IMG/VR virus record: IMGVR_UViG_3300027573_000779
Span: 1-64,000 of that record
Length of the DNA: 64,000 nt
Strand: one strand, 5' to 3'
Part shown: in pieces, positions 179 to 43,500 of the stretch
How positions within the stretch are numbered: the first letter of the stretch is position 1
Layout: every line of letters starts with the position of its first letter
The notes under the pieces: generated by a model
What the model was told of the DNA's origin: nothing
Databases searched by the model: none
What the model saw: only the letters and a program-made list of their open reading frames with translations
Made by a program: the position numbers and the translations under genes

Positions 179-2848
179 TTATCTACTATTGTATGTAAGC
201 ATCGCTGGTGAAGAGTTTAACGTTTGATACTTGCTCCAAATTGTAATTGTATATTGCGTCTTTCTTGTAATTAAGTCAACATAACTGTATGAAGTACTAT
301 TAGCCGCTAGTGTCGCGTCTACTTCAAGAGTGGTTTTCCCTTTCACTTTAGAAACAATCCTCAAACGATAACCCTCCTCCCCTGTGGAATTGTCTGTCCA
401 ATTTATGAGCAAACCATTTCCAGTTCTTACTACTCTAAGGTTGGTCGGAGGATTTAATATAACCGTTGGCGCGTTAGTAACAGTTATTGTTGCGTCTAAA
501 CTAATCTTTACGCCACAGTTATTAGTAACTATAGCCTTGTAAACTCCCGCGTTAGTGCTATTAGCCGTGAAAGTATAGTCATCATCGCCTTGAGCAACTA
601 ACACATTATCTTTATACCATTCATAGGCTAACGGTGCGGTTCCAGTTGCACGAACGCTTAAAGTATTAGTAGTCCCAATCAACATTGTTGCAGATTGTGG
701 CTGCACCGTAATAACTGGCGCGTCACAAGGCGGAGGCGGAGGCGGAGGTTCTGAACCATCAAACACCGTGACATAAAACCACCCCTTAACATTGAAATAT
801 TTACCTTTAAAAGTTACATTGAATTCATAGGTGCCGGGATTAGTATAAGTAAAACTGCCATAAGGCACTGAAATAGACTTTAATAAACCTGTATCCAATG
901 GGTCGATAAATATCATTACCGGACCATAAGGTTCTACGCTCCCTGAAAAATCATAATTTAAAGTAAAAGGAGCAAACCCGGACTGTTGGTCTATCTTTAT
1001 ATCGATGTTCGGAGCAACCGTTGTAGAGTTTGTTTCGGCACCAAATCTGATATATTTATAGTCAGAATAAAATATCTCTTTTAAAGGAGTCTCAACTATA
1101 TGGTAACCAACAACACTTCTGTTAGTCTGTGTATTAAGATATCCGAGAGTATTGCGAGAACAATTAGTAATACTCTCAAACGTAAAATATGTCACACTTG
1201 CCACTCCTCCCAACACACCAATTATATGACTTACCCATAACTGTTGAGGAGCGCCTTCTGTAAGACAAAGCCCTATACGGGGTAACATTAACAGTGGGTT
1301 GGGGTCGGGAATAACAATAGTCTCCATTGTGAAAACACTGGGAGAAATCTCAGATTTGAAAATATTTATTCCTATTTTCTTTTGTGTAGCTCCTCCCTTG
1401 CCATCTAAAGCTGTAACTGTCACTCGGGCGACGAAATCTATAACATATTTTGGAGCAATAAAAGAAACAGAATTTAAAGTCGTTTGGAAAAAGTTATCAA
1501 TAGATGATATAACAACTCTAACAGGGTCTCCATTAGGGTCAGTTGCCGTAGCACTAATAGAAACGTTTTCTCCTGCCATTACATTTTGAGTAAATTGCAC
1601 GTTCAAAACAGGCGGATTATTCGGTTGCGGATTAAGTATAAACGGATTAATTAATGCCTTTCTAACATTAATTTTACCACCGGTTTGACTCTGTGTAGCT
1701 GGAGGGTCAGTTAAAATATCATAACTATCAGGATGTAAAATAGCATCCCGTAGTTGAGTCGCCGTTAGATTAGGATTAACTGACAAAATTAAAGCTGCAA
1801 GCCCCGCAACGTGAGGAGTAGCCATTGAAGTACCATTTAAAATTCTATATCCGTTAGTGTTTCCCAAGGACACACTATTGGTTGGCACGGTGCTTAAAAT
1901 ACCAACACCGGGGGCAGCAATATCTACATTAGCATAACCATAGTTTGAAAAGGACGCTTTTTTATTATTAATGTCAGTTGCCATAACAGTAATAACACTG
2001 TTATTTGTAGCTTCCGCTGGTGAGTAATTATTAACATCAATATTAGCAGAAGAATTTCCCGCAGCAACAATAGAAGTAACACCAGCGTCTTCTAATCTTT
2101 TAAATGCCTCAGACGTGGCACTATCTATAGCTGAACCACCGCCCCAAGAATTACTGGTCAACCGAAAATTAATTCCGCGAGTTTTCTTAAGTTCAATTAT
2201 CTTATCGTAAAGTAATATCGCGTCGCTTCGACTACCAGAACCACTTGAACCAAGAAATTTAAATCCAGCAATCTTTACCTTCCAATTAACTCCTACTACA
2301 CCAATTCCGTTGTCTCCAACCGCACCTATAGTTCCAGCGCAGTGCGTTCCATGTCCATGGTCATCAATAACTCCCTCAGTTAAAACTCCTAGCCTAGCTG
2401 TCCACCCGTGAGCACCCGTTATTGGGTCGGTCCAAACGTTTGCAACCAAATCAGGATGTTCTGTCCAAAGCCCAGTGTCTACTACAGCCACAATAATATC
2501 TTCTCCTCCTGTGCTAATATCCCAACCTAAAGGAGCTTCAATATTTGGCATCCCCCAAAGTTCGGAATAACGAGGGTCATTAGGGATTGCATCTAAAGTT
2601 ATTTCTTGGTCTGGCTCCAAGAATTCAAACTTGTCAGTTGCTAAAAGTCTTTCAATAACATCGGGATTATTAAACTCAAACCTATGAATATCAACATATT
2701 GTAAATGTTGAGATTTTCCATTATTTCCTTTAACAAGACCTTCTATCTCGTCTTTATCCTTGTTGTTTTTTAATTTACCCAACCAAACTTCGCCATTTAG
2801 ATTGAGCGCTAAAAAGAGAACTAATATACAGTTAAATACTTTTCTCAT
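179..2848 (-). CDS. Secreted S8 subtilisin-like serine protease with C-terminal Ig/PKD-like, Pro-rich linker, Ig and FN3 domains
   Basis: Signal peptide; catalytic motifs VVDTG, HGHGTHCAG, NGTSMATPHVAG; oxyanion AAGN; C-terminal PPTNLRV...WTDNS FN3 pattern. Confidence 0.93.
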   Translation of the reverse strand: MRKVFNCILVLFLALNLNGEVWLGKLKNNKDKDEIEGLVKGNNGKSQHLQYVDIHRFEFNNPDVIERLLATDKFEFLEPDQEITLDAIPNDPRYSELWGMPNIEAPLGWDISTGGEDIIVAVVDTGLWTEHPDLVANVWTDPITGAHGWTARLGVLTEGVIDDHGHGTHCAGTIGAVGDNGIGVVGVNWKVKIAGFKFLGSSGSGSRSDAILLYDKIIELKKTRGINFRLTSNSWGGGSAIDSATSEAFKRLEDAGVTSIVAAGNSSANIDVNNYSPAEATNNSVITVMATDINNKKASFSNYGYANVDIAAPGVGILSTVPTNSVSLGNTNGYRILNGTSMATPHVAGLAALILSVNPNLTATQLRDAILHPDSYDILTDPPATQSQTGGKINVRKALINPFILNPQPNNPPVLNVQFTQNVMAGENVSISATATDPNGDPVRVVISSIDNFFQTTLNSVSFIAPKYVIDFVARVTVTALDGKGGATQKKIGINIFKSEISPSVFTMETIVIPDPNPLLMLPRIGLCLTEGAPQQLWVSHIIGVLGGVASVTYFTFESITNCSRNTLGYLNTQTNRSVVGYHIVETPLKEIFYSDYKYIRFGAETNSTTVAPNIDIKIDQQSGFAPFTLNYDFSGSVEPYGPVMIFIDPLDTGLLKSISVPYGSFTYTNPGTYEFNVTFKGKYFNVKGWFYVTVFDGSEPPPPPPPCDAPVITVQPQSATMLIGTTNTLSVRATGTAPLAYEWYKDNVLVAQGDDDYTFTANSTNAGVYKAIVTNNCGVKISLDATITVTNAPTVILNPPTNLRVVRTGNGLLINWTDNSTGEEGYRLRIVSKVKGKTTLEVDATLAANSTSYSYVDLITRKTQYTITIWSKYQTLNSSPAMLTYNSR

Positions 2849-4618: not shown

Positions 4619-5722
4619 TTAATTCTTCAAAACCTGATACAATAATTTCTTTCTATCTTCTGAATCTAAACCCTTACCGTCCAACAGTTTAAACACAAAA
4701 GAAGCGCGATTTGTATTTCCGTATGCTTTAATAACTTCAAGCGCCTGTTCTTTTCGAGTTGGTAAATGCGCCAAACGACTGGTCACAAAAGTATTCATGC
4801 CTTGAATAATCTTTGCAACCTCTTTTGAACCGTCACAAATCCGCGATGCATCCCCTCTACATTGATTCCATAGCTCCCAATCAAATTGAGAAGTAATATT
4901 AGCTTCAAAGGTTCGATATTCAGGTTCACCTTGCGCAAACCACACATCCACAACTTTATCGAAAGAAGACAAAGCTTCCTTCATTCTGTGCAAGCTCAAA
5001 TACCACAAGGACTTACATTTATGGATTGCTTGACCGTCTTTAGAATAAACACAAACGCCCTCTTTGCCTTTCCATGTCTCGACATCAGTCATTAAAGCTT
5101 CAACTGAAGAAAATTGATAAGTAGAAGGTCGCTTAAATTCTAATGCTTTCGCAACTTCATCGAGTCTTTCCTGAGACCATAAAGTATAATCTAAATGTTC
5201 AACAACTCCAACCAAAATCCAATCGGGCTGTTCACCATAATTTAGAATGATTTTACGAGTAGGGGACACCCATTCAAAGAGCCAAGACTTTTTGCCCCAA
5301 TCTTTAATTGAATTATAAATCAAGTCAATTTTGTATAAAAGGGCTTGTTTAAAAACTTCAATCTCGTGCGCATTTTCTAAATCTTCAACATTTGAAGTGC
5401 CCCGAGTCCGAATGATATGTTTGCCTTTATACTTGGAAACAATCAACAGTGAGCCGTCTACTTTCTCAACGATAGTGGTCTTGTTAAGAGATTTTGGCAC
5501 TGGAAAGTGTTCTAGATTCTCGCCCCAATTCACAAATTTAGGAAAACCTGCCGAAACTAATTCTCCATCGTTATTCCAAAGGCTAGACCGCAATATCTTG
5601 TTATCTTGAGTCCACTTACATCCAATATGTTGGGGTTGGATTAACCACAATTGTTCCCCATCCAAAACATGCTGGTGAATCATGAATTGGGCGCGGTCAA
5701 TTAAATCTAAGTCAATTTTCAA
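4619..5722 (-). CDS. T4 Rnl1-like RNA ligase (nucleotidyltransferase)
   Basis: Motif I EKVDGSL, RTRG, LFEW, EGVCV, KCKS. Confidence 0.82.
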   Translation of the reverse strand: MKIDLDLIDRAQFMIHQHVLDGEQLWLIQPQHIGCKWTQDNKILRSSLWNNDGELVSAGFPKFVNWGENLEHFPVPKSLNKTTIVEKVDGSLLIVSKYKGKHIIRTRGTSNVEDLENAHEIEVFKQALLYKIDLIYNSIKDWGKKSWLFEWVSPTRKIILNYGEQPDWILVGVVEHLDYTLWSQERLDEVAKALEFKRPSTYQFSSVEALMTDVETWKGKEGVCVYSKDGQAIHKCKSLWYLSLHRMKEALSSFDKVVDVWFAQGEPEYRTFEANITSQFDWELWNQCRGDASRICDGSKEVAKIIQGMNTFVTSRLAHLPTRKEQALEVIKAYGNTNRASFVFKLLDGKGLDSEDRKKLLYQVLKN

Positions 5723-9942: not shown

Positions 9943-12135
9943 TCACAAGTATTTCGACAAAATCATATCTGTCTCAAATGGAGTCGTTTCAGCCGAAAAA
10001 ACCACGTCTGCCTTCTCTGATTTATTTACCAACTTTCCGCGACCTTCTGCGTGCATAGAAAGCAAATCAAACAGATTGGGTTTAACAAGTTTGCACATTG
10101 CCTTACAAACCAAGCTAGTACTCTTTGAATTTGCGACCGCTGCATTTACAAAGTTTGGATTAGATTTCATTGACAAGTCTAACCATACTACTTGCCGCTC
10201 TTTAACATCAATCAGTAATGGTAGAGCTACCGCTGTATCAGCCGTAATGTCAATTTTGTTTTTGACAGTTCGAGCCTCAAAAATTTCACCTGAATTGGGT
10301 TTTTTGCGACCCATCCAACCCGCAAAACATTCTGGCAAATCATGATAAGGTTGTCCAGTATAGCAACGAACACTCATTACAATATAGCGTCCGTTTTGTT
10401 CCATTACATTACTCATTGGAATGTCAATGAATTCCGCTGCTCCATTAGGGGCATTAGTAATATCCCCACTGTGAGCGCCGCCCATATCCTTGAGATTATA
10501 ATACGCAATATCAGTTATGCGTTCAAAGTCTTCGCCAAGAATGGTGGCTGTTAAATCAATATCTGTTCTGCTTTCTCCGTTTTTCCACCAAACAAAGAAG
10601 CGAATGGTGTCGTAATCCCCATCCAAAGGAATCTTGGAACCTCTTACTAGGGTCTTAAGAGCTTTGGACGCACTACGTTGTGAAAACGGAACCTTATAAT
10701 TCTTTAAAGCATCATCAAGATACACGTTACCCAAAGGCTCTAGTTCCGAAAAGCGAGCTACTAAAACATCTCGTGCTTCTTTCACCACTGAATCACAAAA
10801 AGTCTGATTTAAGGGTATAGGAGCAGTATCCAATACTTTAATTTTGGCCAAGTTCCCCTTAGGGAATACAGCATGAAAATCATTTTGATTGCGTTCTTTG
10901 AAATGAGTAAACACCTGAAGCAAAACAGGAGTAGAAACTTTTGAAGCTACGTCTGAAAAACACCCTAATAGTTTCTTGCGCTCTTTGTCACTAGACGCAA
11001 GCCTAAAGATATGGTCCAGCCTTCGGGCAAAATCTCCCGGTCTAGTCCTAAGAAGTTCTACACTCTCTTTTAAATCTCCTTCTAAAAGAGATTTTTCGAC
11101 TTTTGAGTTGAAAGTGACAATTTTGACGTTATCACGTAATTTTGAAAAAGCAGCGAAAGTTACCGGAAACTGTTTCTTATAGTCGCCGGGATGAAGAACT
11201 TCCCCAAGCCTTATCCAACGTTCATCATATTTAACCATTTCTTCGGCTAAACTTGTTTTGCAGGACTCAAGAAGTCCCAACAAAAACTTCCTTTTTCCTC
11301 TTGGAATTTTGATAAACTTGGTCGTATCCGCAAGTGACACGTCTCCTCCGCACAAAGCGGCAGCTAACCTCAATACATCCGTAGGGGTCTTTACATACTT
11401 CTCTAAGATTTTAGCAGAAGTTGTAAAAGAAATCATCCCACTCGCCACAACCGCAAGTTGTTCTTTGTGGGAAATAGTTTCTGGCAGCAAACGAACGATA
11501 TCGTTTTGATAATACGCAATAAAACTTAAAACAATCTCTTTGTCGGACGCTGAGATAGAAGATTTAGCTTGTACTAAAGAAGTAAAAATGGACTCAAAAT
11601 CATTTATGTCGCCAAGTTCAATAGTGTCAAGTTTAACAGGTTCAGCTAACGGCAACCTTTCTTTCTTCTCGTAAGTGGGAAGCCAAGTATCATCTATTAA
11701 ACCTAAATCCTTGAGCCAAAAAGTCCAGTAATGGCGAATCGCATTAGAGTAAAGCTCAAACTCGCTCATATCCATTACTTGTTGGGGGAAATTTGGATAC
11801 ATTGGCCTGAAAGCCCTATGCGCTCCCCGCATTGTCTTCAGAACAGGAACAACTTCTGCATAAAAATCAGACAGTTGAGACTCAGTCAAGCGACTAAGAG
11901 CCTTAAAAAGAGTTGGACTGATGACATAACCTAGACTTTCAAGGTTCTTATCAATGGTCCCAACAAGCAAATCATTGTCCGAGCTTCTGCCTAATGGGGG
12001 AATAACCTTTAAACGCTTCTCTAGATAGATTTGAGTTACGTTCAAAGATTGCGGCACCTTGGTAACAATCGGCACTTGAGTTTTAGTTATTGCCGCCACT
12101 GGCCGTCTGATTGTTCTTCTAGTCGTTGTTCTCAT
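9943..12135 (-). CDS. Large helical (TROVE/Ro-like) protein with C-terminal TerD-like domain
   Basis: C-terminal IRFFVWWKNGESRTDIDL...HSGDITNAPNGAAEFIDI TerD-like motifs; the N-terminal RPGDFARRLD helical region is Ro-like by recalled family resemblance. Confidence 0.7.
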   Translation of the reverse strand: MRTTTRRTIRRPVAAITKTQVPIVTKVPQSLNVTQIYLEKRLKVIPPLGRSSDNDLLVGTIDKNLESLGYVISPTLFKALSRLTESQLSDFYAEVVPVLKTMRGAHRAFRPMYPNFPQQVMDMSEFELYSNAIRHYWTFWLKDLGLIDDTWLPTYEKKERLPLAEPVKLDTIELGDINDFESIFTSLVQAKSSISASDKEIVLSFIAYYQNDIVRLLPETISHKEQLAVVASGMISFTTSAKILEKYVKTPTDVLRLAAALCGGDVSLADTTKFIKIPRGKRKFLLGLLESCKTSLAEEMVKYDERWIRLGEVLHPGDYKKQFPVTFAAFSKLRDNVKIVTFNSKVEKSLLEGDLKESVELLRTRPGDFARRLDHIFRLASSDKERKKLLGCFSDVASKVSTPVLLQVFTHFKERNQNDFHAVFPKGNLAKIKVLDTAPIPLNQTFCDSVVKEARDVLVARFSELEPLGNVYLDDALKNYKVPFSQRSASKALKTLVRGSKIPLDGDYDTIRFFVWWKNGESRTDIDLTATILGEDFERITDIAYYNLKDMGGAHSGDITNAPNGAAEFIDIPMSNVMEQNGRYIVMSVRCYTGQPYHDLPECFAGWMGRKKPNSGEIFEARTVKNKIDITADTAVALPLLIDVKERQVVWLDLSMKSNPNFVNAAVANSKSTSLVCKAMCKLVKPNLFDLLSMHAEGRGKLVNKSEKADVVFSAETTPFETDMILSKYL

Positions 12136-12466: not shown

Positions 12467-12775
12467 CTATTTTAAACTCAATAATCTTTTACAACATTCA
12501 TCAATGGGATTAGCAGCTTGGGCTATCTCTGGATGACGTTCAATTAAAATTGCACAACAAAGTTTCCATTCTTCAACATGACTGCCGCCTAACATTTCTA
12601 GTTCTCGAACTATTCCTTCAAACTTAAGACAGTCATTAAGCCAAGCATTACATAAAAGGTCGCAATAATCAATTGAATACCCCGCTTCCTTTACAAGCTC
12701 GAAAATCATATCCAAAGGAAGTCCATGAGTGTCTTTTAGCTGAAAAACACCTTTGAAGAGTAGTTTGTCTTGCAT
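12467..12775 (-). CDS. Stand-alone fragment resembling the alanyl-tRNA synthetase tRNA-recognition helical domain
   Basis: GVFQLKDTHGLPLDMIFELVKEAGYSID matches the AlaRS AFxLYDT(Y/H)GFPxDLTxxIxxExGxxVD motif. Confidence 0.65.
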   Translation of the reverse strand: MQDKLLFKGVFQLKDTHGLPLDMIFELVKEAGYSIDYCDLLCNAWLNDCLKFEGIVRELEMLGGSHVEEWKLCCAILIERHPEIAQAANPIDECCKRLLSLK

Positions 12776-12820: not shown

Positions 12821-12988
12821 AATCCTAAAAATGAACCGAATCCCGATTCTCCACGGTCATTTTCCGCATCCCTTTCAGGGATAACCCTTTTCGGGCTGCT
12901 ACCAAACGGATGTTTTAATTTAATTAATCGTATCTACTGATGGTTTCGCTATTAATCCCATCTGTATTTAAACTACATTTTTAGGACT
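12821..12988 (-). ncRNA. Unnamed ~168-nt structured RNA immediately 3' of tRNA-Gln
   Basis: 13-bp closing stem AGTCCTAAAAATG/CATTTTTAGGATT; internal hairpins GATGG/CCATC, GCCC-GAAAA-GGGT, ATCCC-TGAAA-GGGAT. Confidence 0.55.
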
Positions 12989-12996
12989 AAGTAAAT

Positions 12997-13070
12997 TGGC
13001 AGGCACAGTTGGTTACGCTCCAACGCCCCATGGTCCAAAGCCACGTACGCTACTATTACGCCATGTGCCA
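12997..13070 (-). tRNA. tRNA-Gln(UUG) with A18, A54, G55, U58 and a U1.U72 mismatch
   Basis: TGGCACA/TGTGCCT acceptor, CGTGG-CTTTGGA-CCATG anticodon arm, GTTGG-AGCGTAA-CCAAC T arm, GCCA. Confidence 0.9.
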
Positions 13071-14809: not shown

Positions 14810-15574
14810 TCAACCAGTGATTTTAGAGCGCGAAGTTGAAAGATTTTGTAAAGCCTCCTGTTCAGAAAGCCCTTTTAATTTTTCATCAAGAACGTTTTTG
14901 CTCCCTTTTTTGTTCTTATCGTCATCCAATAAGGCTATTTCAAGGTCCGCAAACGATTGATTGAGTTTGATTTGAACACTTTCTAGGGCAGTTTCAATAC
15001 AAATCTTATCAAAAGTGTCCCCTTCAATTTCTCCTGCCGCTTCGTTCATAGCCGCCGCCGCACAAGCCATCTTCCATTTCTTTTCTGTGCGTTTGATTGT
15101 CTCCGCAAAGTCCTGAAGAGTTACTTGGGCATCCTGATACACCCCTTGCCGATGTTCAAGCAATTGTCTCATTTTGGCCAACCGTTCTTTATAAACATCA
15201 GCGTCTTCAAGCCCGTCCTTCACGTATTGTTTAACTTGGTCCGCAAAAGTTAAAACCTGTGCCGAAAACTTACTAATATTTTCTTTATATTGGGCGAGCG
15301 CGTCTTGTTTCTTTATATACTGATTTTGTAATGTTTCAACGGGGTTTTTAGCGGACTCAGCTTTTAAGGCTTTTATACGCCAGTTTGCCATCTTCATTGC
15401 AAAGTATGGCAGAAAATTGATAATTCCCCAAGATATCCCGCCAGCAACCAAAAGACCAAATAATCCTTGAATGCTTAAAAAAACAAATGGAGCTACAAAA
15501 ACTCCTAGCACCCCAAGACCAATTACCTTCACTAATAATTCTATCCGTTTTCGTTTTTGTTCTAGGTCAGTCAT
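14810..15574 (-). CDS. Two-TM protein with long coiled coil (PspA/IM30-like architecture)
   Basis: Two N-terminal TM helices followed by ~170 aa of heptad helix ending KKWKMACAAAAMNEAAG. Confidence 0.55.
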   Translation of the reverse strand: MTDLEQKRKRIELLVKVIGLGVLGVFVAPFVFLSIQGLFGLLVAGGISWGIINFLPYFAMKMANWRIKALKAESAKNPVETLQNQYIKKQDALAQYKENISKFSAQVLTFADQVKQYVKDGLEDADVYKERLAKMRQLLEHRQGVYQDAQVTLQDFAETIKRTEKKWKMACAAAAMNEAAGEIEGDTFDKICIETALESVQIKLNQSFADLEIALLDDDKNKKGSKNVLDEKLKGLSEQEALQNLSTSRSKITG

Positions 15575-15948
15575 ATGTTTTGTAAAGATTTATATTTAAG
15601 TCTAATCAGTTCATCTAACGCTTTGCTTTGAACAATGGTTCCAGTTTCCCATCTTTTAACGCTTGCTACGCCAACATGTAAAAAACGCGCAAATTCTATT
15701 TGGGATAAATCTAATGAATTTCGAATTGCCAAAATCTCTTTTCCTGTTAAGAGATTTTGTTTTAGTCTATAAGCATCTACCGTATTCTTTCTTAATTCGT
15801 CTGCTTGTTCAAAGGTCACAGTTTTATATCCACACATAGTACATTCTTCGGCAGACGTAACAACTTCAAACTTTTCCCCATGAAACTCTTGTAAAATTGG
15901 GGCCTTCACTGTTTTAAACTCAGTATTGTTACAATCTAAACATATCAT
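15571..15948 (-). CDS. MqsA-like antitoxin (zinc ribbon + XRE HTH)
   Basis: CLDC...HGEKFEV...CTMCG zinc ribbon; IRNSLDLSQIEFARFLHVGVASVKRWETG HTH. Confidence 0.8.
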   Translation of the reverse strand: MICLDCNNTEFKTVKAPILQEFHGEKFEVVTSAEECTMCGYKTVTFEQADELRKNTVDAYRLKQNLLTGKEILAIRNSLDLSQIEFARFLHVGVASVKRWETGTIVQSKALDELIRLKYKSLQNI

Positions 15949-16835: not shown

Positions 16836-17063
16836 TCAAACTTGTTTGTTTAAATTTTTAATAATAGCTCGAACAAGTCTAGGTTCCGCACGAACATATT
16901 GACAAGCCAAACATTCACAGGTCCAATCTTTTTTCTTGTGAAAAGCGTCAATAACATGCATTGTGCCAAGTACGTCTAAACCTACGTTACGAACTTTAGA
17001 TAAAGCTAGTTCTTCTTGTTGTTCTGGTGTCATAAAAAATGGAGCCAAAGATAGGATTTGCAC
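16836..17063 (-). CDS. Hypothetical protein
   Basis: ORF track; CECLAC motif; start may be at the internal MTPEQ. Confidence 0.55.
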   Translation of the reverse strand: MQILSLAPFFMTPEQQEELALSKVRNVGLDVLGTMHVIDAFHKKKDWTCECLACQYVRAEPRLVRAIIKNLNKQV

Positions 17064-17123
17064 CTACAAATGAGAATTCACAAAATTCTTCCTGTTCTAG
17101 TTGAGGCACTTCGGCAATAAAAC

Positions 17124-17199
17124 TGGAACGGTAGACAAGATTCGCACTTGCGTAAAGGTTGGTTGGAAGCCAACTGCCTGACTTCTAGGCTACTACCGC
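17124..17199 (-). tRNA. tRNA-Gly(UCC) with A18 and G55
   Basis: GCGGTAG/CTACCGT acceptor, GTTGG-CTTCCAA-CCAAC anticodon arm, T loop TGCGAAT, U73-CCA. Confidence 0.92.
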
Positions 17200-17499: not shown

Positions 17500-18287
17500 A
17501 AGTCTGAGACTACAACTTAGATTACTAGTCTTTCCGAAGATTATCAAGGCTTTGCGAGCCTCTTTCCTCCGTTATCCTCATAAACCCTTTAATGGCATCT
17601 ATGAACCTAGCATGGCTGCATTTTTACAGGTTGCATTTCCTGCTACCCATCACTCTACTCGATGTTCACTTTCTGTCTAGCTTGCGGCCAGTTAAGGATT
17701 ATTAGTCCAACATGCAGCGAAACAATCAACTAAATCACCCCTTGCGAGGGCAATCCAGTCTCCATTACCTTGCGGCAGGAGAATTAAGCCACTTTCGAGT
17801 GACAGAGGAAACGTCTTTGCTTTTTATATCATAGAACGATATGTTGGGATTACACCAACGCATCTAACAGCGACGTGCGTTTCCTGTCGTTTCATATCCT
17901 TTTGGGATACAAAATGCGACACGCCGCTTGCCTTTCATCTTGCAGACTACTCAACCAGATTACTCGACTTTGGATAACTTTTTAAGGGTTATCCATTACC
18001 GTTTAACCTTGCTATTAAGCCCTTGCTTGCATGGCTTGAACTTAATAACTCCTCTTTGTCCTTAGCTGTCGCTGTTTGGCATGATAATATATTAGATTGC
18101 GAGTCTAATACCCCTACTCACCGATTGGCTCTGTAGGTTTAACTATCCAGCTTCCAGTTACCTCACGTTATCGTAAGGTCTCAGGACTGAGTTTGCCTGA
18201 ATATCCCTTTGGAAAGGGCGCGAGGTTAGTTAGCACCTTCGCCTTTCGCCGTCTTGCGACGGGTTATTTAACGTGGTCAGGCCCACA
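17500..18287 (-). ncRNA. GOLLD-like giant ornate ncRNA (~790 nt)
   Basis: ORF-free, many GNRA-capped hairpins (GTC-GCAA-GAC, CCCTC-GCAA-GGGG, CACTC-GAAA-GTG), 5' loop GCCTGA complementary to TCAGGC, 3' GAGTAG...GATAATC...GAAAGACTAG...GTAGTCTCAG as recalled for GOLLD; located within a tRNA cluster. Confidence 0.7.
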
Positions 18288-18413: not shown

Positions 18414-18490
18414 TGGTCCCTCTGGCCGTGGTTGCAACGGCACTGTCAAGCTTTTAAGGCTCGCGTCTCCTGCTCTTGGACTACAGAGGG
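18414..18490 (-). tRNA. tRNA-Leu(UAA) lacking the long variable arm; A18, G55
   Basis: CCCTCTG/CAGAGGG acceptor, CGAGC-CTTAAAA-GCTTG anticodon arm, 5-nt variable loop, GCCGT-TGCAACC-ACGGC T arm, ACCA. Confidence 0.87.
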
Positions 18491-18495
18491 TAAAA

Positions 18496-18570
18496 TGGTG
18501 CGGAAAGGGAGAAGTCGCACTCCCACCTTAAACTTGGCAAGTTCACGTTCTACTACTAAACTACTTCCGC
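18496..18570 (-). tRNA. tRNA-Gly(GCC) with A18, G55, an 8-nt T loop and A73
   Basis: GCGGAAG/TTTCCGC acceptor, TGAAC-TTGCCAA-GTTTA anticodon arm, GGGAG-TGCGACTT-CTCCC T arm. Confidence 0.87.
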
Positions 18571-19413: not shown

Positions 19414-19911
19414 TTACAATTCTTTGCCATCCAACCCCACAAGAGTTGAAACCCTCTTCCAACCATACGTTTTCATCTGTTCTTCATTCATGGTGTCAAG
19501 GCTGGCTTCGGGACTAATCACAAAAATGGAAATATTCTTCTCTCGTATGGTTTTTAGATATTTTTTGACAATAATTTCAAGAGAATAAGCTGATTGTTGA
19601 GCGTATTGAGGGTCGATTCTAAGAACGACCAAGCTGTTAGGTTCAATCTCATCTATCTTGATTATCTTATCTAACTTTAGACCAATTTCAACGTCTGTCT
19701 CTTGTTTAAGCCAACGAATAAATTTATCTTGAACATCCTGTGAGACCCCTTGCCCCTTCATTAATTCTTCGACAGAAGCATATCTTCTCCCGGTAGGTTT
19801 AATTTCTTCTGGATTTTTTAAAGGATGATTATCGTTCAGAGGATTTTCACATCCTACATCGTCATCTTCTGTTGTTCGGCCCATATAAATTCTTTCTTTA
19901 TTATGCTGCAA
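19414..19911 (-). CDS. Hypothetical protein
   Basis: ORF track; follows the PurA-like gene. Confidence 0.6.
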   Translation of the reverse strand: MQHNKERIYMGRTTEDDDVGCENPLNDNHPLKNPEEIKPTGRRYASVEELMKGQGVSQDVQDKFIRWLKQETDVEIGLKLDKIIKIDEIEPNSLVVLRIDPQYAQQSAYSLEIIVKKYLKTIREKNISIFVISPEASLDTMNEEQMKTYGWKRVSTLVGLDGKEL

Positions 19912-21241
19912 CCATCTCTTTTTTCAAGTTTAAAAAAGACATCTTATCGTTTGCCATTTCCCCATAAGATTTAATACCTATAGGGACATTTAACATATCA
20001 GTAAGAATATTAGGAATTGCTTCCCCTTCTACTTTTTCCGATTCACAATTAACTTTACCGAGAGTTTTACCTAGTTCTTCCTGATTAACTAAAAATGACA
20101 TATGGGGTTTTTTAAGTTCCCAAAGTTTTCCATTTAAATTATAGCCAGTGTTAATATACCATGGATTGATTTCATTAATTCTATCACAATGAGAAACCGC
20201 CAAATAATCTACCCCACCGTTAACTTCTAGGGCATATTTTAAAAGGGGAATATCTAACATGCCCGTTCTAAATCTTCCTTGCCATGGACCAGTTGTATTA
20301 GCTGTGTCTTGTAAATTCCAAGGCATTTCAGTTGGAAAAGGTCCTGCGCCGTGTCTGGTGGCATAAATTCTAGTTACACCAATCTCAACAATGTTAGATT
20401 CTAATAACCCCAAGCCAGCTTCATTTAAAACCTTATATACGTTTTCTGTGGTTGTATTACTCCAAGTTGTGTGGGGGTGAAAACCCCATTTTTCATCTAG
20501 TAATATGCCTTGAGCGCCCTCAAAAACAGGATTATTGGAACCTTTTAGCAATTCTGAAACCTGTTGAGCGTCTATGATGTTAATTTTTTTGCTTAATTCC
20601 TGATATTCTTTAGCTATACGGTCAGTAAAACGCAAATCTCTGAAAAACTTAGCATGAGAACCTATAAAATTATAGAAATCAACCCCTTCCCTGTCTAGGC
20701 GCGAAATCATCGCCCTAAAGGTAAGCCAAAGCTTTTCATGGGTAATATCATAATTCTTAAGGTCTTTAACCCGTAAAACATTATCTCTCTTTAAACTGTC
20801 TAAAACTGTTTCTCCAATCCCCACTCCACACGAGCCATGACGATTATTGTTTCTACTCTCTTCTAACATCCTGTTAGCCGCAACATGAAATGGGGTAGTA
20901 ACCAAAGCTCGTTCATCTACATAAATTGATTCAAAGTTTCCCCCTTTGCGCCAAGTATTTGCACTTAAAACCTCTTCTTCTTTTATTAAGGATAAGGGGT
21001 TAAATAAAACGTGCTTAGTGAGTAATGTTTTAACGTTCCGATTGACTAAAGTTCCACTGCCAAACTGAGCAAAAACGTGAGAGTCGCCACTTGAAGTAAC
21101 AACTCTGTGGGCACATTGAGCGCCGCCATTATATCTGATAACTAAATCAGAATTGTTTTGACGGACAAGAAAGTCAACAACACTTCCTTTTGTTTCGTCG
21201 CCGTGTTGCAGACCCACAACTATGAAAACATTTTTGTCCAT
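19901..21241 (-). CDS. Divergent adenylosuccinate synthetase-like protein (start revised to MDKNV)
   Basis: GDETKG, RYNGGAQCAH, FEGAQGILLD, TRHGAGPFPTE, GRFRTG. Confidence 0.9.
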   Translation of the reverse strand: MDKNVFIVVGLQHGDETKGSVVDFLVRQNNSDLVIRYNGGAQCAHRVVTSSGDSHVFAQFGSGTLVNRNVKTLLTKHVLFNPLSLIKEEEVLSANTWRKGGNFESIYVDERALVTTPFHVAANRMLEESRNNNRHGSCGVGIGETVLDSLKRDNVLRVKDLKNYDITHEKLWLTFRAMISRLDREGVDFYNFIGSHAKFFRDLRFTDRIAKEYQELSKKINIIDAQQVSELLKGSNNPVFEGAQGILLDEKWGFHPHTTWSNTTTENVYKVLNEAGLGLLESNIVEIGVTRIYATRHGAGPFPTEMPWNLQDTANTTGPWQGRFRTGMLDIPLLKYALEVNGGVDYLAVSHCDRINEINPWYINTGYNLNGKLWELKKPHMSFLVNQEELGKTLGKVNCESEKVEGEAIPNILTDMLNVPIGIKSYGEMANDKMSFLNLKKEMVAA

Positions 21242-21310
21242 AAATTTGAAAAAAAGGGAGAGGAAAGGCAACCATAACCATTCCTCTCCCGGTGTGCGAA
21301 CCCGAACCAA

Positions 21311-28560: not shown

Positions 28561-28775
28561 ATTTCACCTTTCCAACAAATCTTATTTGCGCGTTCAGCAG
28601 CTTTCTTTTTTGAAATATCTTCTTGTATTTTTTTCATACACTTTTTCGCATCTTCTTCCCTTCTCAACGTGCAAAACCCATAGGTCCACGTGTCAAAATC
28701 GTGCCACATTCCAAACTCACGAAACTGAGGAAGATAAACTTCCCGATAAACGTCGTAAAAGATTCTTACTTTCAT
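28557..28775 (-). CDS. Hypothetical protein
   Basis: ORF track. Confidence 0.55.
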   Translation of the reverse strand: MKVRIFYDVYREVYLPQFREFGMWHDFDTWTYGFCTLRREEDAKKCMKKIQEDISKKKAAERANKICWKGEI

Positions 28776-29869
28776 ACCGCGACCTCTCCTTTTATAGCTG
28801 GATGTGGGTCGTAGCCCTCTAACCTAATATCCTCATACTTGAAATCAAAAAGGTCTCGCTTATCGGGGTTGAGCCATAAGCGGGGTAAAGGTTTAGGCTC
28901 GCGGCTTAGTTGCTCATTTACCTGCTCTTTATGATTCTCATAAATATGCAAATCTCCATAGGTATGAATGAAAGTTCCCGGCTGCATATTAACACAATGG
29001 GCGACCATTGCTAATAGGAGACTATAAGATGTGATGTTGAATGGCACGCCTAGGAAAGTATCACAGCTTCTTTGATAGAGTAGAAGATTAAGACGGCGAC
29101 TTGGAACACCCATTCTATTTAAAGCCTCTTCTTGCTCTTGAATAGTATGGTAACCTACTTGGCCCCACGAGCCTTCTTTTTGTTTGTAAGTGGGGTTTTT
29201 AAAAGATAGCTCAAATCTTTCGTCGTGTGTTAGTTCCTCAGTATGAAACTGAAACAAGCAATGGCACGGCGGCAGCGCACATTTCTCGACCCAATAAGGA
29301 TGCCATGCACTTACTATCATGCGGCGGTCATCGGGGTTAGTCTTGAGTTTGTCGAGGACTTTCTGGAGTTGGTCTACCTCTCCCTTCAGTCCTTGTTCAA
29401 CACAATTCTCATAAAAATATGGAAATGCTCGCCACATCCCACCATAAGTTCCTTCGCCTAATTCTCCATGCTCGGCAGCAAATTTTTCGTCATTCTTTAT
29501 TCTCTCTAAGAACTTATCCATAGATAAAGCTCTTCCGTGTTCGTCGCCATCCCATTTAAAAATACCAGTAAGAGTTGGAAACTTTTCAGCATACCTCTTA
29601 TAGGGCCAAGAATTCCAAATATGAACGTCATTATCCACCAAATACTTAATGTTGGTATCTCCCCGTATGAACCATAACAGTTCGTGAACAACGCCTTTAA
29701 ACCACACCTTCTTAGTTGTTAATATAGGAAACTCCTCAAAACTAACAGGAAACTTCGCCTGCTCCCCAAACACTCCTACAGTATTTATCCCCGTCCGGTT
29801 CTTCTTAACCGTTCCCTTTTCCAGAATAGTATTTAAAAGTCTAAAATATTCCTTGTCAGTATTATTCAT
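28772..29869 (-). CDS. thyA: Thymidylate synthase
   Basis: ALPPCHCLFQF, YQRSCDTFLGVPFN, YGDLHIYENH. Confidence 0.96.
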   Translation of the reverse strand: MNNTDKEYFRLLNTILEKGTVKKNRTGINTVGVFGEQAKFPVSFEEFPILTTKKVWFKGVVHELLWFIRGDTNIKYLVDNDVHIWNSWPYKRYAEKFPTLTGIFKWDGDEHGRALSMDKFLERIKNDEKFAAEHGELGEGTYGGMWRAFPYFYENCVEQGLKGEVDQLQKVLDKLKTNPDDRRMIVSAWHPYWVEKCALPPCHCLFQFHTEELTHDERFELSFKNPTYKQKEGSWGQVGYHTIQEQEEALNRMGVPSRRLNLLLYQRSCDTFLGVPFNITSYSLLLAMVAHCVNMQPGTFIHTYGDLHIYENHKEQVNEQLSREPKPLPRLWLNPDKRDLFDFKYEDIRLEGYDPHPAIKGEVAV

Positions 29870-40572: not shown

Positions 40573-43500
40573 ATGACAAAAACTTTAACTCAGGACGCTA
40601 CCTCTATTAATTTTGAACAGGAAATTTCAAACTATATTTTTGTTAGTCGTTACAGTAGATTTAATGAAAAGTTAGGGAGAAGAGAAACATGGGATGAGGC
40701 AGTTAGTAGGTTGGAAACCATGCACTTAAAGAAATTTAATTATCTTTCAAAGGAGGATAAGGATGAAATTAAGTGGGCGTTTGATATGGTTAGAGCAAAA
40801 CGGGTCGTTCCTTCGATGCGAAGTTTACAGTTCGGAGGCAAAGCAATTGAAGCTCATCAAGCTAGAATTTTCAACTGTAGTGTTCGGCATGTAGATTCTA
40901 TTCGTTCTTTTGCTGAGATAATGTATCTTTTGCTTTGTGGATGCGGGGTAGGTATTGGAGTAAGCAGGTTTTTTCTTCGTCGCTTGCCTGATTTGGTAGA
41001 TGCTAAAGATAAAACTGGAACAGTTGTCACTTATAGTATTGAGGATAGTATGGAGGGGTGGGCTGATTCAGTTGAAGCTCTTTTGATGTGTTATTTTAAG
41101 AATACTCCCTATACAGGTAGGAAGATTTGTTTTGATTATTCTAAAATTAGAAAAAAAGGAACGCCTCTTAAGACTGGAGGAGGTAAAGCTCCGGGTTACA
41201 AAGGCTTAAAAAACACTCATCTGAAAATTAAAGCTCTTCTTGACCATATTATTGAAAATAAAAAACAACTTCGACTTAAATCTATTGATGCTTATGATAT
41301 TTTAATGCATTGTGCCGACGCCGTTCTTTCAGGGGGAATTAGACGCTCAGCTACTTCGGTTATTTTTGATGAAGACGACGAAGATATGATGAATGCTAAA
41401 ACCTCATTTAAAGTAACTAAAAAAAGTGGGTTTGAAGAAGATGGGACCTCTGTTGTTGGTGGAAAGACCTATCAGTTATACAACGGCAAAGTTACTGTTG
41501 ATGGCCTAACCTATTATGTCACTTTGAAAGAATATGAATACGAACAGCTTAAGAAAAGCGGAACAATTAGCTGGATGCATATTCAACCCCAAAGAGCAAG
41601 GTCTAACAATAGCATTTTACTTCTAAGGGATAAAATAACGTATGAGAAGTTCAATGAGATGGTACAAAGAACCCGTCAATGGGGAGAACCGGGATTTGTA
41701 TTTGCTAATCATCCTTGGACCCTACTGAACCCCTGTTTTGAGATAGGGTTTATTCCTATTACCGACGATGGAGTTTGCGGCACCCAGTTTTGTAACCTCA
41801 CTTCTATCAACGGGAAAAAGATTACCTCTTTTCAAGACTTTAAAGAATGTGGCAAGGCAGCTTCATTAATAGGAACACTCCAAGCGGCTTATACTTACTT
41901 CTCTTATCTTTCACAAGCAGCACAGGAAGTAAGCGAGCAAGAAAGTTTATTGGGCGTAAGCCTAACAGGATGGATGGATTCTCCGTCCGTTCTCTTAAAT
42001 GAGGAAAATCAAAGAAAGGTAAGTTCTCTCGTGGTAGAAACAAACAGGATTTGGGCTAAGAAAATTGGCGTAAATCAGGCAGCAAGAACAACATGCGTAA
42101 AACCCGAGGGTTGCGTTTCAGCCGATACTTTAATTTTATCTAATGAAGGTATTTTATATTTAGATGAGGTTGGGGATATTAATGGTAAAGAATGGCAAAA
42201 TCATCAAATAAATATTAGTTCTGCGTTAGATATTAAAGCATCAGATAAATTTTTTGTTAATGGACGCAAAAACGTATTAAAAATTAAATTTAACAGTGGA
42301 TTTGAATTTACTGGAACCCTCAATCATAAAGTTCAAGTTGTCAATAGTCACGGAATAGAATGGAAACAGCTTGATAATTTACAAAAAGGGGATGCTGTTG
42401 TTTACAGAATTGGTGGATACGATAGTGCTTTTGGGTCTTATCAAAAGCTCAAGAAGCCCTCATTTGTATTACATAAAAACTCTCATAACACACAAGAAAT
42501 AATATGCCCCCCTATCTTAGACGAAGAACTTGCTTGGTTCCTCGGTCTTTATTTAGGAGACGGTTCGAATCACGAGAAAGGGATACGTATTTCAGGCAAC
42601 CGAAAAGATGTGTCAGATTTAGATAAAGCGAATAAGATAGTTAATAAATATTTTGGCATATCTTTTACTACTAGTAATTATCAAAAAGATGAATTAGATA
42701 ATAGAATTCAATATTATTTCAATTCAATACAATTGCTTAAGTTTTTGGAAGAGAATGGCCTTTTGAAACCTAAATCTCAAGACATTGAAATCCCTAAGAT
42801 TGTTCGTCAGTCTCCTAAATCTGTAATTGAATTTTATTTAGATGGGTATGCAGCAGCAGATGGATGTGATGAGAGTCGAACTAGGAGTTACCATACTGTT
42901 TCTGAGAAGATGGCAAAGCAACTACCAATAGTTTTAAGAGCTATAGGAAAAGATTGTAAAGTTCGCAAATATAAGCCTTCCAAAGGGTCGTTCGGCACAA
43001 ATGAAAAATATTGGATACAAGAACGAAAGAGCTTAAATGGTAATATAAACAGGAATAGCCGTTTAGATAAAAAAATATACAATATATTAAAGGCAAGCGG
43101 CTACAGTAGCCATTTATATGATGTGGTTGACAATGTTGTTTATGGGGCGAATGAGCCAACCTATGATATTTCGGTTCCAGACGAACATGCCTATATTGCT
43201 AATAGCTTTGTTTCCCACAACACATCATCTTTAGTCCTAGGCACTGCCTCAGGCATTCACCCACATCATTCTAGAAGATATTTCAGAAGAGTTCAATGTA
43301 ACACAGAAGACAATGTGTATAGACACTTTAAAAAGACCAATCCCAAACTTTGTGAGCCTTCAGTATGGTCCGCCAATAAAACAGACGATGTAATTACTTT
43401 TCCAGTCACGGTTTCTGATGAAGCAATGGTTAAAAGTGACCTTTCTGCTATTGAACATTTGGAAATTATCAAATCTGTTCAAAAAAATTGGGTAATTAAC

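What the first reader, a model, noticed from the sequence alone, without database searches (positions are those of the whole stretch)
12467..12775. Stand-alone AlaRS tRNA-recognition fragment
Seen: a 102-aa ORF whose N-half matches the AlaRS helical motif (FQLKDTHGLPLDMIFELVKEAGYSID) with the conserved Asp, but with no catalytic domain. Inference: a dominant-negative or tRNA-Ala-binding mimic that could sequester host tRNA-Ala or tmRNA.
Basis: partly seen in the sequence, partly recalled or inferred. Interest (0 to 1): 0.6.

Follow-up and report, generated by a model that had tools for sequence, protein, structure and literature searches.

The report
Phage protein with AlaRS tRNA-reading hairpin
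A 102-residue protein of a 209-kb freshwater phage carries a true copy of the small hairpin that alanyl-tRNA synthetase uses to read the tRNA acceptor stem; it belongs to a widespread phage-only family whose function has never been tested.

Summary
ORF 12467-12775 (-) is intact. Its residues 4-44 are homologous to the acceptor-stem hairpin of alanyl-tRNA synthetase (AlaRS): Pfam PF01411 E 1.8e-5, below cut-off because only 34 of 552 positions match; family profile against AlaRS by hhalign, probability 96.6%, E 5e-10. In a pLDDT 96 model the ten best Foldseek hits are all AlaRS, the best at 1.1 A over 42 residues. Asp15 and Gly18 align with E. coli Asp400 and Gly403, which contact G3:U70.

There is no catalytic domain here or anywhere in the 209-kb phage genome. 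The ORF is not a relic. It belongs to a family of over 100 clusters of small (85-170 aa) phage proteins, some catalogued as phrog_22967. Two GenBank records name their member alanyl-tRNA synthetase. None has been characterised.

The C-terminal half is family-specific and has no PDB fold match. In three of five tRNA-bearing phage lineages the gene lies within 2 kb of tRNA genes. Here it lies 222 nt downstream of a tRNA-Gln gene that ARAGORN missed at default settings.

A tRNA-end-binding role is plausible but unproven. The proteins are acidic, and Asp15 is kept in only 69% of members.

The parts
12467..12775 (-). Complete ORF (P0001): 102 aa plus stop codon. One compact, all-helical domain.
   Evidence: Searches give the ORF. 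AF2 with a 116-sequence alignment gives pLDDT 95.8 and pTM 0.87, with elements b6-7, H10-17, turn 18-20, H21-30, b34-35, H37-47, H49-61, H67-80, H82-85, H90-101. The homologues found (45-62% identity to it in the alignment) are complete proteins of 111-142 aa; three of the encoding genes were checked and translate intact.
12644..12766 (-). Residues 4-44: the AlaRS-like acceptor-stem hairpin (strand, helix, G-x-P turn, helix, strand). It is homologous to E. coli AlaRS about 390-428 and A. aeolicus AlaRS 373-421.
12722..12736 (-). Codons for K14-D15-T16-H17-G18, aligned with E. coli AlaRS Y399-D400-T401-Y402-G403. In AlaRS these residues contact the G3 2-amino group and the U70 2'-OH from the minor groove.
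   Evidence: Alignments. Residue roles come from PMC6055181. Family conservation: Asp 79/115, Gly 115/115, and the following Pro20 112/115.
12470..12643 (-). Residues 45-102: the family-specific helical C-terminal half. It includes the WLNDCLKF and ELEMLGGS blocks, which are the best-conserved stretch among the close relatives.
   Evidence: Alignments A1 and A6. No AlaRS or other profile match extends past residue 44. No whole-domain PDB fold match; best Z 4.4.
12997..13070 (-). Neighbour: tRNA-Gln(UUG) gene with encoded CCA, a U1.U72 mismatch, G2:C71, G3:C70, G73 and a non-canonical T-loop. Its 3' end lies 222 nt upstream of the ORF start on the same strand.
   Evidence: Rfam RF00005, 44.3 bits. 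ARAGORN calls it only at a relaxed threshold.
12833..12849 (-). Terminator-like hairpin followed by a T-run, between the tRNA-Gln gene and the ORF. It is a consensus match only, and the number of such matches in the region is no higher than in shuffled sequence.

Best explanation
What it is (high confidence). The ORF is a real gene for a small, non-catalytic phage protein. It is a divergent member of a widespread, phage-restricted and uncharacterised family of 85-170 aa proteins. The N-terminal ~45 residues are a homologue of the hairpin that AlaRS inserts into the minor groove of the tRNA acceptor stem at the 3:70 pair. In this protein Asp15 corresponds to E. coli Asp400 and Gly18 to Gly403. 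The hairpin is built into one compact domain together with a family-specific bundle of five helices.

How it most likely works (inferred, modest confidence). The hairpin is used as in AlaRS, docking on the acceptor-stem minor groove of a tRNA or tRNA-like RNA. The protein would then act during infection as a small tRNA-end-binding accessory factor, for example escorting or shielding host or phage tRNAs, or limiting access of enzymes that act on the acceptor end. It lacks the Asn303 element that makes AlaRS reject G3:C70, so it need not be specific for tRNA-Ala. It cannot aminoacylate.

Shown: homology, fold, conservation, phage-only distribution, single copy, and a position beside tRNA genes in three of five tRNA-bearing lineages. 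Inferred: RNA binding, its target, and the benefit to the phage.
For: Homology to the AlaRS hairpin.

Retained contact residues: in AlaRS, Asp400 is the positive reader of G3:U70 and D400A or D400N nearly abolishes charging. Gly403 NH and the Tyr399/Asp400 carbonyls bind the U70 2'-OH (PMC6055181). P0001 and its closest relatives keep the Asp and the Gly.

Trans-acting precedent: the Nanoarchaeum equitans AlaRS beta subunit supplies the rest of the recognition domain and confers G3:U70 specificity in trans (PMC10036535).

A real family under selection: 132 profile hits, 113 of them small proteins. The confident single-domain model depends on the family alignment. The nearest ESM Atlas clusters are 88-100% viral.

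Genomic neighbourhood:
- This window: 222 nt downstream of tRNA-Gln, inside a stretch that runs across the record's ends (about 208.8 kb to 18.6 kb) and holds all 7 tRNA genes, a GOLLD RNA and a T4 Rnl1-like RNA ligase.
- Aeromonas phage CC2: 180 nt after a run of 11 tRNAs.
- Aeromonas phage Ahp1: inside a cluster of more than 20 tRNA genes (26 Rfam matches in the record), close upstream of a tRNA-Ala gene.
- Xanthomonas phage XaC1: 1.7 kb from tRNAs.
- Klebsiella phage FBKp24: 1.3 kb from an RtcB ligase gene.
Under uniform placement, Fisher's combined p over 5 lineages is 0.004.
Against: - No RNA-binding test was possible.
- The family is acidic (median pI 5.3, median net charge -4). The hairpin segment itself averages net -2.
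- The Asp is replaced by E, H, S, R or others in 31% of members, so reading of the G3 amino group is not a family-wide constraint. The invariant G-x-P could be purely structural.
- The hairpin is a small part of the AlaRS-tRNA interface.
- In FBKp24 and Serratia phage Moabite the gene lies 131 and 156 kb from the tRNAs.
- Eleven loci from smaller or fragmentary phage contigs have no tRNA gene within the sequence held.
- The closest relatives of P0001 sit in the head module, between portal, scaffold and capsid genes, of small phage contigs.
- tRNA regions of large phages are hot spots for small accessory ORFs, so the uniform-placement null is generous.
Confidence: 0.4

Rival explanations
1. Protein-binding accessory factor. 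The AlaRS-derived hairpin serves only as a structural element of a new compact helical domain. The acidic protein binds a host or phage protein, for example as an inhibitor of a host enzyme or defence protein, or as a head-assembly or internal virion protein, and has no RNA role.
For: - Acidic family.
- The strongest conservation among close relatives lies in the family-specific C-terminal half, not in the hairpin.
- The Asp is variable across the family.
- The closest relatives lie between portal, scaffold and capsid genes.
- Neighbours vary, as is typical of accessory or counter-defence genes.
- Two jumbo phages carry the gene far from their tRNAs.
Against: - No partner is indicated by conserved gene neighbourhood.
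- The exact AlaRS contact residues (Asp, Gly) are kept in this protein and in most members.
- Proximity to tRNA genes in three independent lineages.
- No fold match to any known inhibitor or assembly protein.
Confidence: 0.33
2. One reading: the protein poisons host alanylation or trans-translation, either as a dominant-negative of AlaRS or by sequestering tRNA-Ala or tmRNA through G3:U70.
For: The hairpin is the AlaRS G3:U70 reader and Asp15 is kept (PMC6055181). In Aeromonas phage Ahp1 the homologue lies just upstream of a tRNA-Ala gene.
Against: - There is no C-Ala dimerisation domain, so no path to a dominant-negative effect (general knowledge of AlaRS, not tested here).
- Stoichiometric sequestration of an abundant tRNA by a weak, acidic 102-aa binder is implausible (inference).
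- It would also starve phage translation (inference).
- Asn303, which gives AlaRS its G:U versus G:C discrimination, is missing.
- The Asp is lost in 31% of the family.
- This phage has no tRNA-Ala to compensate.
Confidence: 0.07
3. Non-functional remnant of a decayed phage AlaRS gene, or a chance ORF with a chance motif.
For: The match is short (about 40 residues) and below Pfam's curated cut-off.
Against: - More than 100 small homologues exist, with conservation extending beyond the AlaRS-like part.
- An identical copy occurs on a second contig and in independent freshwater samples.
- The family-informed fold is very confident.
- There are no flanking AlaRS debris in the genome.
- Profile-profile E is 5e-10.
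Confidence: 0.02

Closest known systems
AlaRS tRNA-recognition domain hairpin (PF01411 positions about 373-421; E. coli residues about 390-428 including Y399-D400-T-Y-G403-F-P; PDB 1riq, 3htz, 3hxu, 5knn)
   Same: Same strand-helix-GxP turn-helix-strand unit. It superposes at 1.1-1.4 A over 36-42 residues with 28-36% identity. The Asp and Gly that contact G3:U70 are kept.
   Different: Only about 40 of AlaRS's roughly 870 residues are represented. There are no class II catalytic motifs, no Asn303 element, no editing domain and no C-Ala domain. The hairpin packs instead against a family-specific helical bundle. Scores fall below the curated family cut-offs.
Small phage proteins catalogued as phrog_22967 or annotated by similarity: Serratia phage Moabite CPT_Moabite_235 (alanyl-tRNA synthetase, 132 aa), Xanthomonas phage XaC1_496 (alanine-tRNA ligase, 90 aa), and hypothetical proteins of Aeromonas phages CC2 and Ahp1 and Klebsiella phage FBKp24
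   Same: Same family by profile search. Similar size, phage-only, and the same hairpin plus D-W/Y...DA motif. Annotators of Moabite had already noted an InterPro IPR018162 hit and an HHpred match to AlaRS.
   Different: P0001 belongs to a rare, divergent subfamily with the WLNDCLKF block, with very few close relatives in the collections searched. It lacks most of the N-terminal PxYxTGxTxxG extension and does not itself reach phrog_22967. None of these proteins has a tested function.
Nanoarchaeum equitans split AlaRS, beta subunit
   Same: It is a natural case in which part of the AlaRS tRNA-recognition domain is a separate polypeptide and confers G3:U70 specificity in trans (PMC10036535; PMC11392972).
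   Different: [quoted passage not shown] This phage encodes no catalytic partner.
Tupanvirus mini-AlaRS
   Same: A virus-encoded, reduced AlaRS derivative (PMC10036535).
   Different: It is the opposite reduction. It keeps the catalytic and recognition domains and is an active enzyme, but has lost the conserved Asn and Asp. The phage protein keeps the Asp hairpin and nothing else.
AlaX and other free-standing aaRS-domain proteins
   Same: The general kind: a single aaRS domain living as an independent small protein.
   Different: AlaX is the editing domain (tRNA_SAD) and is catalytic. No tRNA_SAD or editing match is found here.

Membership tests
Alanine--tRNA ligase (AlaRS; PF01411 tRNA-synt_2c, TIGR00344 alaS) | Class II catalytic core (motifs 1-3), covered by profile positions about 1-250 | tested here: not met
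   The protein is 102 aa and the match is confined to profile positions 381-414 of 552. A whole-genome six-frame search with PF01411 finds only this fragment.
Alanine--tRNA ligase (AlaRS; PF01411 tRNA-synt_2c, TIGR00344 alaS) | Score at or above the curated family cut-off | tested here: not met
   24.0 bits against a 30.3 cut-off for PF01411. 21.2 bits against a 457 cut-off for TIGR00344.
Alanine--tRNA ligase (AlaRS; PF01411 tRNA-synt_2c, TIGR00344 alaS) | Minor-groove G3:U70 reader hairpin with Asp400 and Gly403 (E. coli numbering) | tested here: met
   K14-D15-T16-H17-G18-L19-P20 aligns with Y399-D400-T-Y-G403-F-P. The hairpin superposes on AlaRS structures at 1.1-1.4 A. Residue roles are from PMC6055181.
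Alanine--tRNA ligase (AlaRS; PF01411 tRNA-synt_2c, TIGR00344 alaS) | Major-groove reader Asn303 region, editing domain and C-Ala domain | tested here: not met
   No sequence corresponds to these regions and there are no PF07973 or PF02272 hits. All alignments end by residue 44.
Small phage AlaRS-hairpin proteins (phrog_22967 and relatives; uncharacterised) | Detectable sequence-profile relationship to the family | tested here: met
   A profile built from P0001 and its two close relatives retrieves 113 small proteins at E<=1e-3. 18 of the 116 aligned sequences hit phrog_22967. The 116-sequence profile finds single-copy members in CC2, Ahp1, XaC1, FBKp24 and Moabite. P0001 alone does not reach phrog_22967.
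Small phage AlaRS-hairpin proteins (phrog_22967 and relatives; uncharacterised) | Family motifs: G before the first helix, G-[FL]-P turn, D-[WY] after the second strand, D-A in helix 3 | tested here: met
   P0001 has G9, G18-L19-P20, D36-Y37 and N43-A44. Family frequencies are G9 110/112, G18 115/115, P20 112/115, D36 100/116, W37 90/116 (Y 12) and A44 96/116.
Small phage AlaRS-hairpin proteins (phrog_22967 and relatives; uncharacterised) | Small (85-170 aa), stand-alone, encoded by tailed phages | tested here: met
   102 aa, in a 208,933-bp virus record. The nearest ESM Atlas clusters are 88-100% viral. A pattern scan of one genome for each of 185,579 prokaryote species, with one subfamily, gave a single hit on a 5.8-kb MAG contig.
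Pentatricopeptide-repeat (PPR) proteins | Tandem 35-residue helical-hairpin repeats | tested here: not met
   Designed PPR chains top the profile-against-PDB list only by summing many repeats of about 5 bits each. No single stretch is significant. P0001 has no internal repeat.

The most novel reading that the evidence does not exclude
The family is a phage-encoded, free-standing reader of the tRNA acceptor stem, co-opted from the element that defines alanine identity. It would bind G.U- or G-containing 3:70 pairs of tRNA-Ala, tmRNA or other tRNAs. By doing so it would control access to the acceptor end during infection, for instance protecting tRNAs from host toxins or defence nucleases that act on the acceptor stem or CCA end, or tuning charging. 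That would make it the first viral effector built from an aaRS identity-reading motif.
Probability: 0.2. Interest if true: 0.8.

Novelty: new member of a known kind. Interest (0 to 1): 0.5.

Why it matters
The G3:U70 reader of AlaRS is the textbook example of the operational RNA code. A phage-wide family that has excised just this about 40-residue reader and rebuilt it into an independent small domain would be a natural experiment. It would show what the hairpin can do alone, and it may reveal a new way for phages to handle tRNAs.

The family also has cultured, tractable members (Aeromonas phages CC2 and Ahp1, Klebsiella phage FBKp24, Serratia phage Moabite, Xanthomonas phage XaC1), so the question can be tested directly.

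On the practical side, database names such as alanyl-tRNA synthetase for these 90-130 aa proteins are misleading. They should read AlaRS acceptor-stem hairpin domain protein, non-catalytic.

Tried and rejected
- PHROGs scan of P0001 alone: no hit.
- Whole-domain fold searches found nothing convincing. VIA-align against 48,161 PDB representatives gave a best Z of 4.4-4.7, within the noise for helical proteins. BFVD returned only other unnamed small phage proteins and the Moabite homologue. Weak matches of residues 35-102 to LuxR-type HTH domains and to CarH helical bundles (Z 3.0-3.4) were judged to be noise.
- PPR hits in the profile-against-PDB search were rejected as a repeat-summing artefact.
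- T4 cef or any other T4 homologue: none found in the T4 genome.
- Conserved partner gene: none. The 730-aa downstream neighbour (phrog_33734) is unrelated to the about 785-aa portal-like neighbours in relatives.
- More genomic contexts were sought without much gain. IMG/VR scans gave 7 loci, and two further scans failed for lack of a conserved stretch. The metagenome scan gave only the source contig and one short contig. The genome scan gave one MAG contig. Identity look-ups gave mostly 1-2 kb contigs. tblastn with three more subfamily members against cultured phages added nothing.
- Expression data: no RNA run holds the locus.
- Complex prediction was not run, because no specific protein partner is claimed and the host's AlaRS is unknown.
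- Erwinia phage PhiEaH1 gave a weak hit (E 0.6, inside a 183-aa ORF) and was not counted as a family member.

Full report
**The sequence.** The window is the first 64 kb of a 208,933-bp virus record rated 100% complete by CheckV. The same DNA occurs in groundwater and freshwater-sediment metagenomes, and no RNA run holds it. ORF 12467-12775 on the minus strand is intact: 102 codons plus a stop, with an in-frame stop four codons upstream of the ATG. It lacks a Shine-Dalgarno motif, but so do nearly all genes of this phage. I take that as a sign of a host that does not rely on Shine-Dalgarno initiation, possibly Bacteroidota; this is an inference.

**Is the AlaRS resemblance real?** Yes.
- Alone, the protein hits Pfam PF01411 at E 1.8e-5. 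The 24 bits fall below the 30.3 cut-off because only residues 4-37 match, against profile positions 381-414 of 552.
- It hits NCBIfam alaS at E 7e-5.
- Among PDB sequences it finds only Aquifex aeolicus AlaRS, residues 379-415.
- The word-index search found just two relatives. I therefore ran the exhaustive profile search, which returned 132 hits, 113 of them small proteins of 63-205 aa.
- Of the 116 aligned family sequences, 40 hit PF01411 and 39 hit alaS independently, and 18 hit phrog_22967, a family of unknown function.
- The family profile hits bacterial (A. aeolicus, E. coli) and human AlaRS chains at E 4e-6 to 1e-3, and archaeal A. fulgidus only weakly at E 0.8.
- I built an alignment of 30 AlaRS sequences from Verrucomicrobiota genomes. 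hhalign of the family against it gave probability 96.6%, E 5e-10 and 42 aligned columns, covering P0001 residues 4-44.

**Structure.** With the three-sequence alignment AlphaFold2 gave pLDDT 80. With the 116-sequence alignment it gave pLDDT 95.8 and pTM 0.87. The model is one compact domain: short strand, helix 10-17, G-L-P turn 18-20, helix 21-30, short strand, then five more helices.
- The ten best Foldseek PDB hits are all AlaRS, from A. aeolicus, E. coli and human. They are local alignments of 36-58 columns. The best are 3htz at 1.1 A over 42 columns with 36% identity and 3hxu at 1.4 A over 36 columns. E-values are about 2 because the matches are short.
- The ESM Atlas shape search again gives AlaRS fragments and viral hypothetical proteins.
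- The domain as a whole has no PDB match, with a best Z of 4.4.

**Which AlaRS element is it?** Searches align K14-D15-T16-H17-G18-L19-P20 with E. coli Y399-D400-T-Y-G403-F-P. According to PMC6055181:
- The Asp400 side chain and carbonyl bind the 2-amino group of G3 in the minor groove.
- The Tyr399 and Asp400 carbonyls and the Gly403 amide bind the U70 2'-OH.
- D400A and D400N are nearly inactive.
- Asn303, in a different part of the domain, repels G3:C70.

The phage protein therefore keeps the positive reader and lacks the negative one. It also lacks the catalytic core, the editing domain and C-Ala. A six-frame PF01411 search of the whole phage genome finds nothing else, so this phage has no catalytic partner of the kind seen in the split N. 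equitans enzyme.

**The family.**
- Across 116 sequences G18 is invariant (115/115). P20 (112/115), G9 (110/112), D36 (100/116), A44 (96/116) and W/Y37 (102/116) are nearly so.
- The Asp400 equivalent is Asp in only 79 of 115 members, with E 9, H 9 and others making up the rest.
- The proteins are acidic. The median pI is 5.3 and the median net charge -4. P0001 has pI 4.9 and net charge -6. The hairpin segment averages -2.
- Among P0001's close relatives the strongest conservation is in the family-specific C-terminal half.
- The family looks restricted to tailed phages. A pattern scan of one genome for each of 185,579 prokaryote species, using one subfamily, found a single hit on a 5.8-kb MAG contig.
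- Cultured carriers include Aeromonas phages CC2 and Ahp1, Klebsiella phage FBKp24, Xanthomonas phage XaC1 and Serratia phage Moabite, each with a single copy. T4 has none.
- XaC1 and Moabite annotate their copies as alanine-tRNA ligase and alanyl-tRNA synthetase. The Moabite record cites InterPro IPR018162 and an HHpred match. The resemblance has thus been noticed by annotators. I found no paper that studies these proteins.

**Genomic context.** An Rfam scan showed something ARAGORN had missed at default settings. A tRNA-Gln(UUG) gene lies at 12997-13070 on the minus strand, with encoded CCA, a U1.U72 mismatch and an odd T-loop. Its 3' end is 222 nt upstream of the ORF on the same strand. All seven tRNA genes of the phage lie in one stretch that runs across the record's ends, from about 208.8 kb to 18.6 kb. 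That stretch also holds a GOLLD RNA (17501-17929) and a T4 Rnl1-like RNA ligase (4619-5722).

In other phages:
- CC2: the homologue starts 180 nt after a run of 11 tRNAs.
- Ahp1: it sits inside a cluster of more than 20 tRNA genes (26 Rfam matches in the record), close upstream of a tRNA-Ala gene.
- XaC1: 1.7 kb from the tRNAs.
- FBKp24: 131 kb from the tRNAs, but 1.3 kb from an RtcB ligase gene.
- Moabite: 156 kb from the tRNAs, next to thymidylate synthase.

Under a uniform-placement null the per-lineage p values are 0.010, 0.015 (Ahp1, used for the Aeromonas lineage; CC2 gives 0.005), 0.038, 0.58 and 0.78. Fisher's combined p is 0.004. This null is generous, because tRNA regions of big phages are rich in small accessory ORFs.

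Eleven loci from smaller or fragmentary phage contigs have no tRNA within the sequence held and have varied neighbours. The closest relatives of P0001 sit in the head module of small phage contigs. The order is portal, small genes, family gene, scaffold-like gene in L018 and L019, and scaffold-like gene, family gene, capsid-like gene in L002. The portal, scaffold and capsid labels are my reading of the sequences, not family hits. No conserved partner gene emerges.

**Interpretation.** The what is secure: a real, non-catalytic phage protein built around a homologue of the AlaRS acceptor-stem hairpin. It is a divergent member of an uncharacterised but catalogued family.

The how is inference. 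I rank the options as follows:
- tRNA-end binding accessory factor, about 0.4. This rests on the origin of the hairpin, the retained contact residues, and proximity to tRNA genes in three independent lineages.
- Pure protein-binding role, about 0.33. This rests on the acidity, the variable Asp, the dominance of C-terminal conservation, and the head-module position of the closest relatives.
There is no dimerisation domain, the expected affinity is weak, it would hurt the phage's own translation, and the phage has neither a tRNA-Ala nor any G3:U70 tRNA of its own.
- A pseudogene remnant or chance ORF is effectively excluded by the family conservation.

**Novelty and verdict.** This is a new, divergent member of a known but unstudied kind. 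Interest is moderate. The link to the operational RNA code and the availability of cultured phages make it a cheap and well-defined experiment, but nothing here demonstrates function. Database names that call such 90-130 aa proteins alanyl-tRNA synthetase are wrong as to activity.

Noticed in passing
window 17501-17929 (-): GOLLD RNA (Rfam RF02032, 194 bits against a gathering score of 150, full model 1-416). It lies between phage tRNA genes at 17043-17199 and 18414-18570. GOLLD is a large structured RNA of unknown function, reported to form RNA-only multimers (bioRxiv 10.1101/2024.12.08.627333, listed).
   Followed up: partly
window 12997-13070 (-) and 17043-17115 (-): Two tRNA genes that ARAGORN misses at default settings but Rfam finds (44.3 and 43.7 bits). 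One is tRNA-Gln(UUG) with a U1.U72 mismatch and a non-canonical T-loop, and the other is tRNA-Thr(UGU). All seven phage tRNAs encode their CCA end, and none is tRNA-Ala or has G3:U70.
   Followed up: yes
window 4619-5722 (-): T4 Rnl1-type RNA ligase (PF09511, E 1e-10) in the same tRNA-rich region. In T4 this enzyme repairs tRNA cut by a host anticodon nuclease (T4 record annotation). I did not identify a polynucleotide kinase partner.
   Followed up: no
window 15571-15948 (-): MqsA-type antitoxin-like protein (zinc ribbon plus HTH; PF15731, E 3e-10). It overlaps by 4 nt the start of a 254-aa gene of unknown function (14810-15574, phrog_27316). This may be a phage-borne antitoxin or regulator.
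   Followed up: no
window 9943-12135 (-): The 730-aa protein immediately downstream of the ORF matches only phrog_33734 (unknown function, E 9e-95) and no Pfam family. A sigma-70-like promoter match (10 of 12, with a TG extension) lies at 12347-12320 in the 331-nt gap between the two genes.
   Followed up: partly
window 40573-43827 (+): B12-dependent (class II) ribonucleotide reductase interrupted by an intein with a LAGLIDADG endonuclease domain.
   Followed up: no
window 179-2848 (-), 19901-21310 (-), 28772-29869 (-): Auxiliary genes: a subtilase with an Ig-like domain (889 aa), adenylosuccinate synthetase, and thymidylate synthase.
   Followed up: no
whole window: Almost no gene has a Shine-Dalgarno motif. 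Upstream regions are A/T-rich, which suggests a host that does not use Shine-Dalgarno initiation, possibly Bacteroidota. GC skew switches sign near 36 kb, where gene orientation flips.
   Followed up: partly
loci L046, L048-L058 (Verrucomicrobiota genomes): Many genomes of this phylum carry an AlaRS whose open frame is only about 593-668 aa (PF01411 positions 1-453). Most of these have Glu instead of Asp at the Asp400 position (LYETYGFP).
   Followed up: no
proteins P0038, P0060, P0074 and others: Long proteins (516-2870 aa) match only profile positions 3-31, the PxYxTGxTxxGxxLxGG extension that P0001 mostly lacks, in 3-9 repeated stretches. That N-terminal element resembles a repeat found in large proteins. 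Their identity was not examined.
   Followed up: no
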